Assembly: GCF_001194135.2 (NCBI RefSeq)
Contig: NC_068986.1
Span: 7,080,436-7,144,435 of the forward strand
Direction: 5' to 3'
Origin: Octopus bimaculoides
Lineage: Eukaryota
Length of the DNA stretch: 64,000 nucleotides
Shown: piece after piece, positions 31,436 to 44,733 of the stretch
How positions within the stretch are numbered: position 1 is the first letter of the stretch
How the letters are laid out: every line of letters begins with the position of its first letter
The notes under the pieces: generated by a model
The model's database searches: none
Told to the model about the DNA's origin: nothing
The model's input: only the letters and a program-made list of their open reading frames with translations
Position numbers and translations under genes: made by a program

Positions 31436-32021
31436 TGTAGCAGGTAACAGCTAACCTTTGGGTGCTGTTTTAGATCCCGTTGTGTCTACCACTCTGATTG
31501 GTTGGTACTGGCGCTATTTGTCTCTTACTCTATCACATGCCAAAATGCAACCCAACCAATCATAGCCTCCAAGTAAGTCACGTGAGACAGTCTTTTCTAA
31601 ACAGCATTTGAGCCTACCATTAGCTATCAAAATCTCGAGGTCTGTTGGTTTCAGACTTTCTATAGTCTAACCACTGACCGCATTGCAGTGATCTCCATCT
31701 TCATCACCACCATCATGTCTCTCACCAATGTTGTCAACTATATCTACACTGCACCGGTTCTAACATATCGCTGTTCGTGAGTTTTCCTCACCAGGGTTAA
31801 CAGCTAACATACAACCCATGCAAATGCATGTAGATATCTGAATAAATGTCCATCAACCACTTTCATTCAGCTTGTGTATATATATGTGTGGCCACAATAA
31901 ACGTATTTAAAGTTATCACCTTTGTTCCATGTATTTCTTCATCGGGGTTTTCTACCAAACGAGATTACAGCCTTCTGAGTGAGTCACATTAGGTGGCTCA
32001 ACAACAACATACCCATCTATA
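31436..32021 (+). mobile_element. 5' LTR (586 bp) of a CsRn1-like Gypsy element
   Basis: Starts TGTAG and ends CTATA (near-inverted termini); two AATAAA; its 3' part is repeated at 34203-34544; followed by A plus a PBS-like sequence. Confidence 0.8.
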
Positions 32022-32405
32022 ATGATGACCCCAATGTAACATGGACACTTATCCTTCTAAAATGTTGACCCCGACACAACATGGACACTTATCCTTCTAA
32101 AATAGTGACCCCCGACACAACATGGACACTTATCCTTCTAAAATGGTGACCCATGATGTTCAAGACCACCACATCATCTATAATGGTGAACCCCGATGTG
32201 GAAAACATATCCTTCTATAATGGTAACCTCGATGTAGCATGGAACACACATGATGACCCTGATGCAGAATACATCAACTTGACTATCCAACTATAATGGT
32301 GACCCGACGTGTAAAACACACCACAATGTTCCAGACCACTATCCATCTAAAATGATGACCACGATGTTCCAGACCACTAAACCAACTAAAATGGTAACAC
32401 AACAC
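32012..32405 (+). repeat. Array of about 10 units: LTR-end copy + tRNA-Trp PBS-like motif + variable spacer
   Basis: PBS-like starts at 32023, 32063, 32103, 32144, 32184, 32221, 32251, 32297, 32353 and 32392; consensus CCWTCTAWA-A-TGGTGACCCCGA(C/T)GT. Confidence 0.85.
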
Positions 32406-32419
32406 AGCACAGCACACAC

Positions 32420-32720
32420 TACAGGCCCGTTGACTTACCAAATGTGGACCCCACATCTTATGTCCTGCGACTCAGGTCATTCTTTGCTGACCTGCCACCA
32501 ATGCTTCCTCATGACCAGTCTATTTCTTCTACAGAATCTCCAGATATTTCTACCTGGACTCACATGTTTGTAAGAAATGATGCCGTCAAGGGACCACTCA
32601 CACCTCCCTACACTGGACCCTATCATGTTCTTAGAAGCACACAGAAACTGTTCTCTGTGGACATTCATGGAAAAAAAAGAAACTGTCACTATCGAAACAT
32701 TTATGCCACTTGCTGATACA
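32420..32720 (+). mobile_element. Gypsy integrase C-terminal fragment (GPY/F module)
   Basis: DPTSYVLRLRSFFADLPP...THMFVRNDAVKGPLTPPYTGPYHVL..TQKLFSVDIHGKK, typical of CsRn1-like integrase tails. Confidence 0.88.
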
Positions 32721-33239
32721 CCCATCATTTCACAAACACTGCTNNNNNNNNNNCACAAACACATTCTTCATCTTACAGGACATTCTGGCAGATCGGTTCA
32801 TTGGCTGAAGAAACTGTCTCAGACTATTTACATTTCTTAACTTTGCCTTGCCAGTGACTGTTCTGGAGAATAGACTTATGTTGCTATAGACACCACATTC
32901 ACATTTTTTCTCTTTCTGTATCATTGTACAAATATGCTTTGTTCTATTTGGTTGGACATCTTTCTTTGCTGAATGTTTTTCCTTGTATACTTGCATTGTA
33001 ATTTTCACATTGTTCCAGTTTTGATTGTTAAATATTTTGTTCATATTTAAAAAAAATTTTTGCTCAACATTCATACATACATATACACATATATGCTGTC
33101 TGCCTCATGCTATCCACTCCAACACATTTCTAGGTTTATTCTAGCAGAATGCTTTTCTCATCTGGCAAAAAGCTCTTTACATGTTTTTGTCATGTGTTTC
33201 TTCTCTGGTTTGTAGGATAGACAAACCACCTCTTATAAA

Positions 33240-34200
33240 TGCATAACAGAAGCCAGCCAAGGTAGCACTGGCATTGGCCACGTTCGGATGGTGCTTTTTC
33301 TGTGCCACCAGCACAGGGATCACAACTACAATTTCCATTTGGTTTTTATTTTGATATACTTGACTCAATAGGTCTCCTCAAGCACAGCAGGTCGCCCTAA
33401 GATCCAAGGTAAGCACAGCAGGTCGGCCTATGATCCAAAGTACTTTTGAGTGAGCTGGGACTAGTTATGCGAAACTGGTGTAGGATCCAGTAGTGAAATC
33501 ACTTTATTTGTTGGGTCTTCGCAGTCACAGCAAATCTCCAGAGGTCTCGGTCTTTCGCCATTGCCTCTGTGAGGCCCAACGTTCAAAGGTCATGCTTGAC
33601 CACCTCATCCCATGTCTTCTTGGGTCTACCTCTACCTCGGATTCCTTCAACTGTTTGGGAGTGGCACTTCTTCACACATCTCTCCTCATCCAATCATGAC
33701 CATACCAGTGCAATCGTCTCTCTTACACGCCACATCCGGTGCTTCTTACGTCCAACATTTTTCTCAGGGCGCTTACACTCTCTCGTGTGTGCACACTGAC
33801 ATTACACATCCAGCGGATCATGCTAGCTTCATTTCTTTCGAGCCTATACATGTCCTCTGCAGTCAGGGTCCCTGTTTCACTGCCGTGAAGCATGGCAGTT
33901 TGCACACATGCATCGTACAATCTACCTTTCACTCTCTGAGCGAGAGGCCCTTTGTCACCAGTAGTTGTAGAAGCTTTCTAAACTTTGCCCAGGCTATTCT
34001 TATTCTAGTGGTAACACTCTCAGAGCATCCACCCCCACTACTAACTTGGTCACCAAGGTAGTGGAAGCTATCAACTACTTCTAGTTTCTCCCCCAGGAGT
34101 GTGATGGAATTTGTTTTCTGAGCATGTGTGGTGTCTATTGCCCCTGTGCATCTGCCGCACATGAAAGCTAGCTTCTCGGTTAACCTCTTTCTAATCTCGG
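33240..34200 (-). mobile_element. 5'-truncated RTE LINE (ORF C-terminus plus part of the 3' UTR)
   Basis: LEVVDSFHYLGDQVSSGGGCSESVTTRIRIAWAKFR, RLYDACVQTAMLHGSET and the 3' UTR module GTGCTGGTGGCACAGAAAAAGCACC. Confidence 0.92.
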
Positions 34201-34202
34201 AG

Positions 34203-34544
34203 TGTGTTGGTTCTAGACTTTCCAAAGTCTAACCATTGACCATATTGCAGCGATCTCCATCTTCGTCGCCATCATGTCAACAACATCTACACAGCACCAA
34301 CACACTGCACCGGTTCTAACATATCGCTGTTCGTGAGCTTTCCTCTCCAGGGTTAACAGCTAACATACAGCCCACACAGATGCATCTAGTTATATGAATA
34401 AATGTTAATCAACCACATTGAAGACATTTAAAGTCACCACCTTGTTTCATGTCTTTTTTTTTTATACCGTTTTCCTACCAAATGAGATTACAGCCTTCTG
34501 AGTGAGTCACATTAGGTGGTTCAACAACAACCCGCCCATCTATA
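34203..34544 (+). mobile_element. Partial second LTR (probable 3' LTR)
   Basis: Direct repeat of about 31642-32021 (e.g. ACTGCACCGGTTCTAACATATCGCTGTTCGTGAG; GAGATTACAGCCTTCTGAGTGAGTCACATTAGGTGG); ends CCCATCTATA with no PBS after it. Confidence 0.85.
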
Positions 34545-35439
34545 GTGTCTTTCTTACTCAGGCAAAGCCACAAGAATAACAAACCGAAACAAAAGATATT
34601 CATTTATTATCAAATTCTTGTAGAACATATTCGAAGGGAGGCTAGAAAATATTGTAACATTAAAAGGATTGCTGTGGAGTTGATCCCAGAAAGAAGATAT
34701 TCAGTAAAAACGTCCACTTAAAAACAGGAAGAATCGATTAACAAGGGAGATAATTATGGTTTTATCAGGTCGAAAACTGTTCATTTCAATTATCAAATAC
34801 TCCATATGTAAACACCATTTATTTAAACAGTTAATATTTAAAGATTTCATATTCATTAAACCATGCCCACCATCTCTCTATCCGTGTGTGTGTGTTTATC
34901 TGTAGATATTTCCCATATATTAACTTTTAGAATGCAGCAAAACAAGAAATCTATGCTTATGAATATGTTTTTGAAGTTGAACTTTTAAAGCGAGATATCA
35001 TCTAGTTTACGATACTTAGTTTATGTTTTCTTTTTTAAAATAAACGTATCTTAAAGTTTCCAAGAAGTTTCCCTTTTCATAACATTTATACCGCACAATA
35101 ATGATGTATAAATGATCAAAGGTAGTGTAATTTGGGAAAAAAGGATTCTAATAAAATATATAATTATTTTTCGGTGTACAATAACCAAATTACCGCATTA
35201 CTACACTGTAATACTTATTTTGTTGTATTAAAAACAGCTGTTAATGTTTTCTTAGGATACACCTCAGGAAAATTCTATTGAATTACTGATACACTAGAAG
35301 GTAAAATGAATGAATGTCTTTTCTTTGGCAAGAACATCAAATCATTTATATTTTGCCTGGAGATTGTTCATCCATTAGAAGCCCAACACTAATTAACGCA
35401 GTCCATTAATTAATATATATTACCCATCACCTAATTATC

Positions 35440-37624: not shown

Positions 37625-40600
37625 TCATTATCATCACCATCATTTAACATCCATTGTCCATGCTGGCATGGGTTGGGCGGTTTGACCAGGGCTAGCAAGC
37701 TGGAAGGCTGCACCAGACTCTCGTCTGATTTGGCATGATATCTATGGCTGGATGTCCTTCCTAATGCTAACAACTCTGAGAGTTTAAGTGGGGGTGGGGG
37801 TGCTTTTATGTTCTACCGGCGCAGGTGCCATTTGCATAACACCAATATCTGCCACAGCTACAATTTTACTTGGCTTGATGAGTCTTCTCAAGCATGGCCT
37901 AATGCCAAATGTCTTGATCATTTGTCATTGCTTCTGTAAGGCCCAACACTTGAAAGGTGCTTTTCATGTGCCACTGGCATTGGCCACCTTGCCTTCGTGA
38001 GGCCCAACACTTGAAAGGAGTGTTTTATGTGCCACTGGCATGAGTGTCAGTTATGTGACACCAGCATTGGCCACGACTACAATTTCACTTGACTTGATGG
38101 GTCTTCTCAAGCACAAAAGTCTTGGTCACTAATCATTGTCTCCATGAGGCCCAATGTTTGAAGATCAGGCCTCACCACCTCATCTCATATCTTCCTAGGG
38201 TTTACCTCTTCCACAGGTTTCCTCCGCAATTAGAGATTGGCACTTCTTTGCACAGTTGTCCTCGTCCATATGCATCACATGACCATACCAGCGCAGTCGT
38301 CTCTCTTGCACACCACATCTGATGCCTCTTATGCCCAACTTCCAGTGAAGCATACTGGCTTCATTTCTTTCAAGCCTATATATGTCCTCGGCTGTCACAG
38401 CCCATGTTTCACTGCTGTGTAGCATGGCTGTTTGCACACAGGCATCATGCAATCTGCTTTTCATTCTGAGCGAGAGGCCCTTTGTTGCCAACAGAAGTAG
38501 GATCTCTCTGAACTTTGCCCAAATTGTTCTCACAGCTACACTCTTGGAGCATCCATCTCCGCTACTAACTTGGTCACCTTGATAATGGAAGCTATCTACT
38601 ACCTCTAACTTACTCCACTGGCAGTTGATGGTGTCTATTTTCGGTGTTTATTGTACTTGTGCATCTTCAACACAAAAGCTATTTTCCCTGTTAACCTTCC
38701 TCTGATATTGCTGTACCTCTTATGTGTCCATAACTTACACCAGGTACATCTTGGAGTTTCTACCTATGCTTTTTCTACCTATGCTTTTTCTACCTATTGA
38801 GCAGGGTCATCTACCTGATGGGATTTGTGATTTGTCTGCCTTGCTACTTACTAAGACTTTGGTTTTTGCTAGGTTAGCTTTAAGGTCCTTTGATTCTAGA
38901 CCTTGCTTCCATACCTGAAACTTCATCCCTAGTTCTGGTAGTGATTCAGCTATAACAACAAAGTCATCAGCATAGAGGAGCTCTCAGGGTGGCCTGTCTT
39001 AAATTCCTCTGTTATTGCCTGGAGGACTATGATGAACAAGAGGGGGCTGGGGATTGATCCTTGGTGAACCCCTACTTCTACCCGGAATTCTTCGCTGTAT
39101 TTGTTGCTAACATTCGCCTTACTGACAGTGTCCCTGTACATGATTTGTACAGCTCTCACCAATTGCTCATCTATCCCTAGTTTCTGCATTGACCACCAGA
39201 TAAGGGATTGGGGAACCCTGTCAAAGGCTTTCTCCAAGTCAACAAAAGCTAAATACAGAGGTTTATCATTGACTATGTATTTCTCCTGCAGCTGCCTTAC
39301 CAGAAATTTAGCATCACTGGTGCTTCCTGGCACAAAACCAAACTGCATCTCAGCTAGACTATCTCTCTCCCTAATTAGTTGGGTTATCACCTGATCCAAC
39401 AATTTGATACCTCTGTAATCATTTTTATGTAAGGCATCACTTTTACCTTTTTAGCAGTTGACTGTGGTCTGCTACACCATTGGGTATGATTCCTTTGTGT
39501 ATCAACTGATTTACAATATGGGTGACTAACCCATAACCCACACTGCCAGATATTTTAAGCATCTCAGTGGTGACTCCTGTTGGGCTGGGAGCTTTCCCTG
39601 TCTTCATATCCTAAATTGCTTTATCTACCAAGGTACTATTGATTCGGATAACTGGTGCCTCATTTGGATCAACATTTGGCAAACTCTCCTCCTCCTCCTC
39701 CCCAGTGGCATTTCCAAGCTCCTTTCTTTGCAGAATCATTAAGTGCAAGTGAACTCTCATCCATGTGGACACGTTTCTTTCTTATTGCATCACAGTTTGC
39801 TCTCACACACTTTCTTGCAATCCCAAACACTTCAAGTCTTGTCACTGAACATAGGCAAACTTCTTCTTTTCTGCTTCTTCCCTGGCTAGATATACCTGTC
39901 TCCTAGCTTCCCTTCTGGCTATCTGATACAGTTCCATGTTGTCCTCACTCTTCCAGGCCTAGTTCTTTGCTCTAATATCCTTGTCTACTGCATTGTTCCA
40001 CCACGACGATGTCACCCTAGGACTGGATGGGACTTTGCACCAGCCACAGATTTGGTCTGTGGCACTCAGCAAGCTATTCTGTAGGAATTCTCAGTTGCCC
40101 ACAATGTCACAAATTTGTAGCTGTTCCCCCGTCTCATCAAATTTCTCAGTTAGGATGTCCTTAAATCTCTGGCCATGTGAAGGGTCCTTAAGCTTCTAAA
40201 TCCTTCTTTTCCAGATTGGTCTGCTTCTTGGCTTCCTTCCGGCCTGATATCTAAACTCACTCATGACTAGTCCATGCTGGGTGGGTGGCTGTTGGGTACA
40301 TTCTTCACCAGGGAAGGTCTTTGTATTGAGGAGCAACCATACATTCTGCTGTCTGGTGAGAATGTAATCAAGTTGGCTAGCAGCGTCACCTGATTGTTAG
40401 GTTATCAGGTGGCTGACTTCTTAAAGTTAGTGTTGTAGATCAATAGGTTATTGGCATCACAGAACTCCAGTAGCCTTGTCCTCCCTTTGTTCAATTTCAT
40501 GGCCCCCATGAATACCATGCTGCCTGACATGCCCGTTGCAATCCCCAACCATGAAGATGCGATCATTGACACTTGTCTTTGAGGTAGCCTGCAGAAGAAC

Positions 40601-43824: not shown

Positions 43825-44560
43825 CATCTTCTTCATTTAATGTCCATGTTCCATGTTGGCATGGGTTGGATGGTTTGACAAAGATCCAATGAGTCAAGGG
43901 CTGCATTGTACTCCAGTGTCTGCTTTGGCATGGTTTCTATGACTGGATGCCCTTCCTAACACTAACCACTTTACAATGTGTACTGAGTGCCACCTGCACT
44001 AATGAGATCACTATGTAACTCACAAGTCAACAAACCTAGGGAGGGAGGATACTGCCCCTGTATGCCAGATGGGTTTTAAGGTATGGGGAAAGAGATTGGA
44101 GTAGAACAGGTTCTTGTTGTAGAGGAGCTACATGGCTACTCCCATTTAGGAGAGAGAAAGTGTGAACAAATCAGAGGTGTCTCCAAAGCAATAGACTGGT
44201 GATGAGGTGTCCAAGTGGAACCACAGGTAGCAGGAGCAGTAATGGGTGGTGGGAATAGGAGTTTGCAAGAGTGGTGGAGAGAAGAGATAGCAAAGTGGGA
44301 GATGGAGGCAGGCAACGTCTGTAATGATTGAGGCAAGGGATGCATGAGTTAGAGGGGTTACAGTGATAGTGGTAGTATAGTAGTAATGATACTGTTGATA
44401 GGGAAAGAAGAGAGAGAGTGAAAGATATGACATATCTGGGTAGACTGCAGGAGCAGAGGTGTAATACATGAGGAAAGATAATTTGGTGGTTTGGGGAGGG
44501 AGATGGCCACTGTAATGTGGGTGCGGAGAACAATATTAATGAATAAAGAATGGTTAACAA
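43825..44560 (-). mobile_element. RTE-tailed retroelement remnant with a purine-rich body
   Basis: CATTTAATGTCCATGTTCCATGTTGGCATGGGTTGGATGG..CTGGATGCCCTTCCTAACACTAACCACT, as in other copies. Confidence 0.65.
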
Positions 44561-44571
44561 GTGATATTCTG

Positions 44572-44612
<41 letters not shown>

Positions 44613-44694
44613 NNNNNNNNNNGAGATGGCCACTGTAATGTGGGTGCGGAGAACAATATTAATGAATAAAGAATGGTTAACAAGTGATATTCTG

Positions 44695-44733
<39 letters not shown>

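What the first reader, a model, noticed from the sequence alone, without database searches (positions are those of the whole stretch)
32012..32405. Poly-PBS array: about 10 tandem [LTR terminus + tRNA-Trp primer-binding site + variable spacer] units behind a Gypsy LTR
Seen: the LTR ends CCCATCTATA (32021), followed by A and ten related motifs at 32023, 32063, 32103, 32144, 32184, 32221, 32251, 32297, 32353 and 32392 (spacing 30-56 nt): TGATGACCCCAATGT, TGTTGACCCCGACAC, TAGTGACCCCCGACAC, TGGTGACCCATGATGT, TGGTGAACCCCGATGTG, TGGTAACCTCGATGT, TGATGACCCTGATGC, TGGTGACCCGACGTG, TGATGACCACGATGT, TGGTAACAC. Nine of the ten are preceded by a copy of the LTR end (CCWWCTAWA-A). The spacers differ apart from the first three. 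Known: TGGTGACCCCGACGTGA is complementary to the 3' end of eukaryotic tRNA-Trp, the primer of CsRn1-like Gypsy elements, and many deviations here are CpG-decay type. LTR elements normally carry a single PBS. Inference: the repeated unit is exactly the pair of cis signals (integrase att end + priming site) needed to make a valid cDNA terminus, so any unit could prime and still give an integrable end. Alternatives are a decoy for tRNA-Trp or its 3' fragments, or a CRISPR-like record of aberrant plus-strand transfers. No age polarity is evident: the best tRNA matches are internal units. I do not know of a description of this architecture, but novelty is unverified.
Basis: partly seen in the sequence, partly recalled or inferred. 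Interest (0 to 1): 0.85.

Follow-up and report, generated by a model that had tools for sequence, protein, structure and literature searches.

The report
Repeated primer-site modules in octopus retrotransposon
Behind the left long terminal repeat of an old, gutted octopus Gypsy-type retrotransposon, the short stretch that holds the repeat's end and the tRNA-Trp priming site is repeated ten times; other copies of the same element lineage carry two or three such modules, so this is an unusual inherited leader layout whose function is not shown.

Summary
Window 32010-32424 holds ten head-to-tail modules. Each has about 13 nt like the LTR end, a tRNA-Trp PBS-like 15-17-mer and a 7-28 nt spacer. 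Nine junctions match TCTAWAATGGTGAC with at most 2 mismatches, against 1.4 expected.

The host element is a CsRn1-like Ty3/Gypsy relic: two LTR copies 80.6% identical, and only the integrase C-terminus left inside.

The array is not private. Three other insertions of the lineage, on three Octopus bimaculoides chromosomes, carry 3, 3 and 2 modules. Window modules U7 and U9 are the orthologues of their modules 1 and 2, so the seven extra modules lie on the LTR side. More distant octopod families have one PBS (B, D) or a module that straddles the LTR boundary (C).

Spacers fall into two or three related types, so they are not CRISPR-like. The 13-nt junction TCTAAAA|TGGTGA is the best-kept part.

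No internal priming is seen in this lineage: both available 3' LTRs stop before module 1, and in the less decayed copies internal modules bind tRNA-Trp weakly.

Most likely this is a heritable, RT- or slippage-generated reiteration of the U5-end/PBS junction, expanded in this dead copy. It is a new variant of known leader repeats and PBS duplications.

The parts
31631..32022 (+). Left (5') LTR copy. Its last 170 nt are homologous to the LTRs of the O. bimaculoides relatives. It ends ...CCCATCTATAA.
   Evidence: Direct repeat with 34193-34547: 80.6% identity over 361 aligned nt, K2P 0.23. Hits to the LTRs of L006 and L002 at 77-80%.
32010..32424 (+). Array of ten modules U0-U9, each made of an LTR-end-like 13 nt, a tRNA-Trp PBS-like 15-17 nt and a spacer. 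Unit lengths are 40, 40, 41, 40, 37, 30, 46, 56, 39 and 46 nt. PBS parts start at 32023, 32063, 32103, 32144, 32184, 32221, 32251, 32297, 32353 and 32392.
32284..32339 (+). Module U7, the best tRNA-Trp match (TGGTGACCCGACGTG). It is the orthologue of the LTR-adjacent module 1 of relative L006, that is, the ancestral first PBS.
   Evidence: Alignment with L006 5248-5400. Edit distance 2. Duplex energy -26.9 kcal/mol.
32379..32424 (+). Module U9 (TGGTAAC...), the orthologue of L006 module 2. It is followed by the internal deletion junction at about 32420-32425.
   Evidence: Homology to relatives' integrase region starts exactly at 32425.
32425..32840 (+). Integrase C-terminal fragment, the only coding remnant. 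It has a frameshift in the A-run near 32668-32676 and a 10-N assembly gap at 32725-32734.
   Evidence: ORFs. It is 78% and 70% identical in protein to O. bimaculoides proteins and 87% and 81% identical in DNA to L001 and L002.
33499..34186 (-). 5'-truncated LINE fragment inserted just upstream of the right LTR. It is not part of the element.
   Evidence: 68% identical to the longer LINE copy at 38085-38697. RT-like ORFs.
34193..34545 (+). Right (3') LTR copy. It ends ...CCCATCTATAG and is followed by unrelated flank, with no module after it.
   Evidence: No profile hit there.

Best explanation
This is the 5' LTR-leader junction of an old, internally deleted CsRn1-like Ty3/Gypsy retrotransposon of an octopus. 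A module of about 40 bp has been reiterated ten times. [quoted passage not shown]

Shown: the reiteration is a heritable trait of this element lineage, with 2-3 modules in three independent O. bimaculoides insertions.

Inferred origin: a misaligned template switch of reverse transcriptase, or replication slippage, across the U5/PBS junction made the first duplicate. Once two modules exist, unequal exchange or further RT switching changes their number and length.

Shown for two insertions: the LTR-adjacent module is the one that primed, because their 3' LTRs end before module 1. The other modules travel in the leader.

Shown: the 13-nt junction core TCTAAAA|TGGTGA is held much better than the rest of each module. 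Inferred: this hints at some use, for example as a fallback annealing, initiation or strand-transfer site. A related family shows that a downstream module can take over priming and move the LTR boundary.

In the window the array is a fossil. Seven extra modules (U0-U6) sit between the LTR and the ancestral first PBS (U7). At least the U1/U2 duplication is probably younger than the insertion.
For: Array and statistics.

Element identity. There is an LTR pair. The integrase fragment continues into the integrase core in relatives, and the break is at 32425. Relatives carry RVT_1, RT_RNaseH_2, Integrase_H2C2 and rve. The PBS is the tRNA-Trp complement. The CsRn1 clade is defined by a Trp PBS and a CHCC Gag (PMC2582038), and the gag motif CWYH..KFKDQAEKCTQPC can be pieced together from copies.

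Family trait. L006 has 3 modules, L009 has 3 and L002 has 2. All are confirmed by the profile at 14-28 bits, and they lie on three different chromosomes. L002 differs from L009 by loss of about one module.

Orthology of U7 and U9 with L006 modules 1 and 2, with U8 as an extra 39-nt duplicate.

Core conservation. Mean majority frequency is 0.86-0.98 for the att core, 0.88-0.90 for the PBS 5' part, 0.64-0.70 for the PBS 3' part and 0.44-0.51 for the spacer. A 15-nt invariant block TCTAAAATGGTGAAC (16 columns counting the preceding T) is the longest invariant run among three leaders whose mean column identity is 76%.

Priming from module 1: the 3' LTRs end without modules.

Boundary shift in family C: the last ~33 nt of the LTR are a decayed copy of the PBS plus the following 22 nt, p<=1e-4 in two copies.

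Age: U1 and U2 are 93% identical, against 80.6% for the LTR pair.

Precedents. Tandem repeats in LTR-retrotransposon UTRs are common. A partial PBS duplication occurs in 14% of HIV-1 isolates (PMC3185550).
Against: Only four copies with an intact LTR-leader junction and only two 3' LTRs could be examined, because no eukaryotic genome could be searched by DNA.

The origin mechanism is not shown. It could be RT template switching or host replication slippage.

Uniform neutral decay does not obviously explain why the junction core is so much better kept than the spacers. If internal modules are functional, 'they ride along' understates them.

The two window LTRs are very divergent (80.6% plus indels), and no target-site duplication was found. 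They may therefore not date one single insertion, which weakens the age argument.

The U1/U2 age difference rests on 41 nt. My own binomial estimate is p about 0.04, and no tool computed it.
Confidence: 0.6

Rival explanations
1. Functional poly-PBS. Every module is a usable pair of integrase att end plus priming site. tRNA-Trp can prime at any of them and still give an integrable cDNA end. The array therefore buffers the element against PBS decay, or against host factors that target the PBS.
For: The junction core is conserved. The last module is invariant in three copies. Family C has a PBS relic inside its LTR end, so a downstream module did take over priming at least once in a related lineage. 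Nine of the ten window modules bind the 18-nt tRNA-Trp 3' end better than the 1% tail of the background. Hosts do target PBS sequences with 3' tRFs and zinc-finger proteins (PMC8931336, listed).
Against: Both available 3' LTRs end before module 1. In the less decayed copies the internal modules are poor tRNA matches, with duplex energies of -14 to -23 kcal/mol against -28 to -31 for module 1. The PBS 3' half is not conserved. No modules were found at other LTR ends in about 200 kb of related loci. The window element lacks gag and pol.
Confidence: 0.2
2. tRNA read-through origin. Each ~40-nt module is a DNA copy of the 3' half of tRNA-Trp, from the 3' CCA back to the anticodon CCA, which is exactly 40 nt. 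It is made when plus-strand strong-stop synthesis runs past m1A58. It is then inserted between U5 and the PBS by a microhomology-guided strand transfer (TGG), so new modules enter at the LTR side.
For: The LTR-proximal modules have periods of 40, 40, 41 and 40 nt. Module U1 aligns in register with tRNA complement 20-36 (TGGACACTTATCCTTCT against TGAACACGCAACCTTCT), with p=0.008 against shuffles and 0.0105 against the genomic background. The related element L021 copies the tRNA complement to at least nt 28, including an exact in-register 11-mer, so read-through products do become heritable in this clade. Families B and C give p of about 0.004-0.01. The extra window modules are LTR-proximal. Read-through beyond tRNA position 54 is discussed in PMC8599865, which says such cDNA cannot be integrated.
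Against: The att part of the modules fits the LTR end (10 of 13) better than the tRNA (8 of 13), and the 4 nt before TGG never match the tRNA; this is my own count. The B-type spacers are not tRNA-like. U0-U2 share derived differences, so they copied each other rather than the tRNA. The anchored alignment test was negative for most modules. The LTR ends themselves are not tRNA-like. The host tRNA-Trp is unknown.
Confidence: 0.12
3. Private minisatellite. The whole array arose at this locus after insertion by replication slippage and has nothing to do with the element's biology.
For: Only this copy has ten modules. U1 and U2 are 93% identical, against 80.6% for the LTR pair. The element is dead. 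The relationships between units look like ordinary minisatellite turnover: U3 resembles U8 at 85%, and there are two or three spacer types.
Against: Two or three modules are present in all three other insertions of the lineage with an intact junction, on other chromosomes. U7 and U9 are orthologous to modules of L006. This reading can therefore explain the extra modules at most, not the architecture.
Confidence: 0.06
4. A decoy or sponge for tRNA-Trp 3' fragments, or a CRISPR-like record of aberrant strand transfers.
For: 3' tRFs do target PBS sequences. The array offers many near-complementary sites.
Against: No small-RNA data are available. The spacers are related to each other, not unique acquisitions. 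Half of the window modules have lost the TGG that pairs with the CCA end.
Confidence: 0.02

Closest known systems
CsRn1 clade of Ty3/Gypsy LTR retrotransposons (CsRn1, PwRn1, AgCR elements; PMC2582038)
   Same: tRNA-Trp PBS directly after the 5' LTR. A Gag with a C-X2-H-...-C-X3-C (CHCC-type) motif. The Gypsy domain order RT, RNase H, integrase.
   Different: Described members are reported with one PBS. Here the U5-end/PBS junction is reiterated 2-10 times. Clade membership was not tested by RT phylogeny.
Partial PBS duplication in the HIV-1 leader (MAL and subtype A type 23-nt insertion; PMC3185550)
   Same: A natural, heritable tandem duplication of PBS sequence just downstream of the PBS in a reverse-transcribing element.
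   Different: It is a single partial copy without the U5 end. Here there are whole modules that include the LTR end, up to ten in a row.
Tandem repeats in the LTRs and UTRs of LTR retrotransposons (for example the cranberry survey, bioRxiv 10.1101/2021.07.15.452536)
   Same: Short tandem arrays (period 2-49 bp, about 2-8 copies for the Ty1-copia elements of that survey) in the untranslated regions next to the LTRs. Their number varies between copies.
   Different: Those repeats are not reported to consist of the PBS and the LTR terminus.
Bipartite or dual tRNA binding sites of Ty3 and Drosophila Gypsy (PMC1635307)
   Same: More than one site on the genomic RNA that pairs with the primer tRNA.
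   Different: Those are two different sites at opposite genome ends that pair with different tRNA regions. They are not tandem copies of the same site.
Primer complementarity extended beyond 18 nt (lentiviruses up to U54, PMC8599865; MusD up to nt 22, bioRxiv 10.1101/2025.05.12.650695)
   Same: The leader sequence behind the PBS continues to match the primer tRNA. This is seen here in relative L021 and, weakly, in the window modules.
   Different: The known extensions are 4-5 nt. L021 reaches at least nt 28. The window array repeats the whole unit.

Membership tests
Ty3/Gypsy LTR retrotransposon | Two LTRs in direct orientation flanking the internal region | tested here: met
   Window 31631-32022 and 34193-34545. 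L006 has both LTRs at 92.3% identity.
Ty3/Gypsy LTR retrotransposon | pol domain order RT, RNase H, integrase, with a Gypsy-type integrase zinc finger | tested here: met
   Met in relatives only: RVT_1, RT_RNaseH_2, RT_RNaseH, Integrase_H2C2 and rve in L003, L008 and L021. The window copy keeps only the integrase C-terminus, and Pfam found nothing in that fragment.
CsRn1 clade | PBS complementary to the 3' end of tRNA-Trp | tested here: met
   Module 1 reads TGGTGACTCCGACGTG in L006 and TGGTGACCCCCGATGTGA in L009, and window U7 reads TGGTGACCCGACGTG. The tRNA-Trp complement is TGGTGACCCCGACGTGA. The human tRNA sequence was used because the host tRNA was not available.
CsRn1 clade | Unusual CHCC motif in Gag | tested here: inconclusive
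   L002 has CWYYSKFKDQAEKCTQPC and P0013 has CWYHRKFKDQADTRTQPC. Each copy carries one substitution, so the full motif is only seen by combining them.
CsRn1 clade | 4-bp target-site duplication | tested here: inconclusive
   L006 has CATG and TATG at the inferred ends, 3 of 4. No duplication is recognisable around the window element.
CsRn1 clade | RT or integrase phylogenetic placement within the clade | not tested
Functional multi-PBS element (internal modules used for priming) | 3' LTRs or solo LTRs that end with one or more modules | tested here: not met
   The window right LTR and the L006 3' LTR end before module 1. The profile finds no modules elsewhere. This rests on two 3' LTRs only. 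A related family (C) does carry a PBS relic inside the LTR end.
CRISPR-like spacer record | Unique, unrelated spacers between conserved repeats | tested here: not met
   The spacers fall into related types: A in U0-U2 and U5, B in U3, U7 and U8.

The most novel reading that the evidence does not exclude
The modules form a working, self-renewing priming region. Downstream modules can take over tRNA-Trp priming and so move the LTR boundary, as the PBS relic inside the family-C LTR suggests. New modules are added on the LTR side by reverse transcriptase itself, templated by the 3' half of the primer tRNA, which would explain the 40-nt period. The leader would then be a growing record of aberrant plus-strand strong-stop events, and a reserve of priming sites against CpG decay or host factors that target the PBS.
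Probability: 0.12. Interest if true: 0.8.

Novelty: new variant of a known kind. Interest (0 to 1): 0.55.

Why it matters
LTR elements are taught as having one PBS that fixes the inner edge of the 5' LTR. This lineage carries the U5-end/PBS junction as a variable array. A sister family has a PBS relic inside its LTR. Together they give a natural system for three questions:
- how the LTR boundary and the priming site evolve;
- how often reverse transcriptase mis-transfers at the PBS;
- whether spare priming sites help an element survive CpG decay or tRNA-fragment and zinc-finger silencing aimed at the PBS.

There is also a practical point. PBS-based LTR annotation tools assume a single site and would misplace the boundaries in such elements.

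Tried and rejected
1. My first guess, from reading the integrase C-terminus, was BEL/Pao. I dropped it when relatives showed Gypsy-type Pfam domains.

2. Spacers as longer copies of the LTR end. A right-anchored alignment against five LTR ends gave a summed p of 0.66, so LTR homology stops at about 10-13 nt.

3. A module absorbed in the LTR end of family A. The last 45 nt of the LTR, compared with the tRNA complement or with the copy's own first module, gave p of 0.06-0.98. The profile found no hit inside LTRs or deeper in the leaders.

4. 'All four octopod families repeat their own LTR end downstream of the PBS.' This is significant only in families A (best p 0.001, but 0.14 in L006) and C (p 0.0002-0.03). 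It is not significant in B and D, where p is about 0.4.

5. Anchored extension alignment of the sequence after the PBS to the tRNA was negative for most modules.

6. A metagenome scan for two junction motifs 15-45 nt apart returned 8 contigs. All are unrelated repeats or coding repeats.

7. An IMG/VR scan for two Trp-PBS starts returned 4 phage coding regions that match by chance.

8. Rfam and ARAGORN found no tRNA or other RNA family in the region, and no tRNA gene in the window or in 11 loci, so the host tRNA-Trp is unavailable.

9. The Logan contigs L019 and L020, which carry a gag relative, have no recognisable PBS module.

10. Several literature searches were swamped by 'PBS' in the sense of buffer. 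No paper describing tandem U5-end/PBS arrays was found within the searchable library. This is absence in that library only.

Full report
**1. The observation**

Window 32010-32424 reads as ten head-to-tail modules. Each module has three parts:
- about 13 nt that resemble the LTR end (TATCCTTCTAAAA and variants);
- a 15-17-mer that resembles TGGTGACCCCGACGTGA;
- a spacer of 7-28 nt.

The unit lengths are 40, 40, 41, 40, 37, 30, 46, 56, 39 and 46 nt. TRF reports period 40/41 for 32016-32152 and period 38 for 32320-32393.

The junction motif TCTAWAATGGTGAC, allowing up to 2 mismatches, occurs nine times in the 64 kb. All nine are here and on the + strand. Shuffles give a mean of 1.4, and 0 of 100 reach 9.

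The edit distance of the PBS parts to the 17-mer is 2-5 for nine units and 7 for U9. Among 40,000 background positions none is at or below 4.

A profile HMM of the att-plus-PBS part scores the ten units at 11.5-24.8 bits. The best background hit in the window and in ten related loci is 6.3 bits.

The 17-mer is the complement of the 3' end of tRNA-Trp, as printed for the human gene in 10.1101/400127. The host's own tRNA-Trp could not be found.

U6 lacks the LTR-end motif and U9 is a poor PBS.

**2. What carries the array**

The sequence 31631-32022 is repeated at 34193-34545. The two copies are 80.6% identical over 361 aligned nt, with 47 gap columns.

Between them only 32425-32840 is coding. 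It is an integrase C-terminus with a frameshift and a 10-N assembly gap. A 5'-truncated LINE fragment lies at 33499-34186 on the minus strand.

The integrase piece is 78% and 70% identical in protein to two Octopus bimaculoides proteins. At the DNA level the similarity to their loci starts exactly at 32425. In those loci the reading frame continues upstream into the integrase core. The window copy is therefore an internal deletion derivative, and the array abuts the deletion junction.

Fuller relatives carry RVT_1, RT_RNaseH_2, RT_RNaseH, Integrase_H2C2 and rve, which is the Gypsy arrangement.

A tRNA-Trp PBS and a CHCC Gag define the CsRn1 clade (PMC2582038). A CWYH...C..PC motif can be pieced together from two copies. 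I did not test clade membership by phylogeny.

My own first guess, BEL/Pao, was wrong.

**3. The array is not private**

Gag and integrase relatives led to three other insertions of the same lineage, on three O. bimaculoides chromosomes. All three keep the LTR-leader junction.
- L006 (CM046610.1) has both LTRs, 92.3% identical, and three modules.
- L009 (CM046617.1) has three modules, whose junction motifs start 34 and 39 nt apart.
- L002 (CM046604.1) has two modules. It differs from L009 by loss of about one module.

The profile confirms all eight modules at 14-28 bits. Every copy of the lineage that I could inspect therefore has at least two modules. The sample is four copies, because no eukaryotic genome could be searched by DNA.

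**4. Polarity**

Window U7, with its long spacer, aligns with L006 module 1. U9 aligns with L006 module 2. U8 is a 39-nt extra duplicate between them. The deletion removed module 3 and everything up to the integrase C-terminus.

The seven modules U0-U6 thus lie between the LTR and the ancestral first PBS. The LTR-proximal modules are the most regular, at 40, 40, 41 and 40 nt. U1 and U2 are 93% identical, against 80.6% for the LTR pair. This suggests that at least that duplication is younger than the insertion. The evidence is weak, because it rests on 41 nt.

Other unit relationships look like ordinary minisatellite turnover. U3 resembles U8 at 85%, and the spacers fall into two or three related types. 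This excludes a CRISPR-like set of unique spacers.

**5. What is conserved**

Across the 18 modules of the four copies, the mean majority frequency differs by part:

| Part of the module | Mean majority frequency |
|---|---|
| 7-nt att core | 0.86-0.98 |
| First 6 nt of the PBS | 0.88-0.90 |
| PBS 3' half | 0.64-0.70 |
| Spacer | 0.44-0.51 |

In the three less decayed copies the last module carries a 15-nt invariant block, TCTAAAATGGTGAAC (16 columns counting the preceding T). This is the longest invariant run in leaders whose mean column identity is 76%.

The two CpGs explain the faster loss of the PBS 3' half. They do not explain the spacers. The junction is therefore under some constraint, or it is repeatedly regenerated. 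I could not tell which.

**6. Is more than one module used?**

The position of the primer defines the inner edge of the LTR. Priming at module k would therefore put modules 1 to k-1 into both LTRs.

The two 3' LTRs available end before module 1: the window at 34545 and L006 at about 9454. No module was found at any other place in about 200 kb of related loci.

Duplex energies with the 18-nt 3' end of tRNA-Trp are as follows:

| Site | Energy (kcal/mol) |
|---|---|
| Perfect PBS | -36.4 |
| Module 1 of relatives | -28 to -31 |
| Internal modules of relatives | -14 to -23 |
| Window modules (except U9) | -15.7 to -29.2 |
| Window U9 | -5.1 |
| Background 1% tail | -14.4 |

So there is no sign of internal priming in this lineage, although the sample is tiny.

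A more distant octopod family (C; loci L004 and L008) points the other way in principle. The last ~33 nt of its LTR are a decayed copy of PBS nt 4-10 plus the 22 nt that follow the PBS. The p value is at most 1e-4 in both copies. There a module straddles the LTR boundary, so a downstream PBS must have become the working one.

Families B (L003, L005) and D (L021) have a single PBS and no significant repeat of the junction.

**7. A second lead: the tRNA itself**

In L021 the sequence after the PBS stays colinear with the tRNA-Trp complement to at least nt 28. This includes an exact in-register 11-mer, TTTGAACACGC. That is far past the m1A58 and U54 stops described for lentiviruses (PMC8599865) and past the 22 nt reported for MusD.

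Window module U1 also aligns in register with tRNA complement 20-36, with p=0.008 against shuffles and 0.0105 against the genomic background. The 40-nt period equals the distance from the anticodon CCA to the 3' CCA.

Several points count against a tRNA origin of the whole module:
- The att part fits the LTR end (10 of 13) better than the tRNA (8 of 13).
- The 4 nt before TGG never fit the tRNA.
- The B-type spacers are not tRNA-like.
- U0-U2 share derived changes, so they copied each other.
- Stricter tests were negative.

The simplest reconciliation is that the module is the LTR end plus an extended PBS. The host tRNA-Trp sequence would decide this.

**8. Comparison with what is known**

- Tandem repeats in the UTRs next to LTRs are common.
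- A partial PBS duplication behind the PBS occurs in 14% of HIV-1 isolates (PMC3185550).
- Ty3 and Drosophila Gypsy have two different tRNA-binding sites at opposite genome ends (PMC1635307).
- Engineered two-PBS retroviral vectors exist. This is from my own knowledge and was not retrieved.

In the searchable library I found no description of a natural, heritable array of U5-end-plus-PBS modules. That is absence in that library only.

**9. Verdict**

The functional readings are unproven.

The best-supported account is a reiterated U5-end/PBS junction with these features:
- it arose by misaligned reverse transcription or by slippage;
- it is inherited with 2-3 modules;
- it is primed at the LTR-adjacent module;
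- it was inflated to ten modules in this dead copy.

It is a new variant of known leader repeats and PBS duplications. Two points remain open: the conserved junction core, and the moved LTR boundary in a sister family.

Noticed in passing
L021 3097-3136 (ENA ERZ21867824 ctg123228l; element 2697-9236): A complete octopod Gypsy element with a single tRNA-Trp PBS. Its leader stays colinear with the tRNA-Trp complement to at least nt 28, with an exact in-register 11-mer TTTGAACACGC covering the T-loop and T-stem. That is much further than the 18-22 nt described for retroviruses.
   Followed up: partly
L008 minus strand about 8646-8750; L004 6480-6560: In octopod family C the last ~33 nt of the LTR are a decayed copy of the PBS (nt 4-10) plus the 22 nt behind it (p<=1e-4). 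The LTR end (16 nt in L008) recurs right after the PBS. The LTR boundary therefore lies inside a tandem module.
   Followed up: partly
L005 6165-6215; L003 1085-1130: About 465 nt inside the leader of family-B elements lies a relic of the family-D junction: an LTR-end-like CCTTTACCCAAAT, a truncated PBS and the T-arm extension. It may be a trace of recombination between element families.
   Followed up: no
L014 1700-2780; L015 520-970 (JGI metagenome contigs): Unrelated 38-39-nt tandem arrays with the unit GGTTCTAAAATGGTGAGNTGGAAGGATCAYTTAGTTTG. They share the 13-mer TCTAAAATGGTGA by chance and have no tRNA-Trp continuation.
   Followed up: partly
window 31663-31680; L019 1-15: The U3 part of the window LTR contains GTCTAACCACTGACC, which looks like an antisense tRNA A-box and D-arm. 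A Logan contig with a related gag starts with TCTAACCACTGAGCC. This may be a SINE or tRNA-derived piece inside the LTR.
   Followed up: no
window 32725-32734: A run of 10 N (an assembly gap) lies inside the integrase fragment, so the true distance there is unknown.
   Followed up: no
window 33499-34186 (-), 38085-39402 (-): Two copies of a LINE with RT-like ORFs. The first is 5'-truncated and ends 6 nt before the right LTR.
   Followed up: partly
window 44500-44608 and 44623-44731: A perfect (100%) 109-nt direct duplicate, 123 nt apart start to start. Elsewhere in the window, SINE-like repeat families have 5-13 diverged copies.
   Followed up: no
window 33380-33442: A 31-nt tandem repeat of two copies, 90% matching (AAGCACAGCAGGTCGCCCTAAGATCCAAAGT), lies between the integrase fragment and the LINE fragment.
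   Followed up: no
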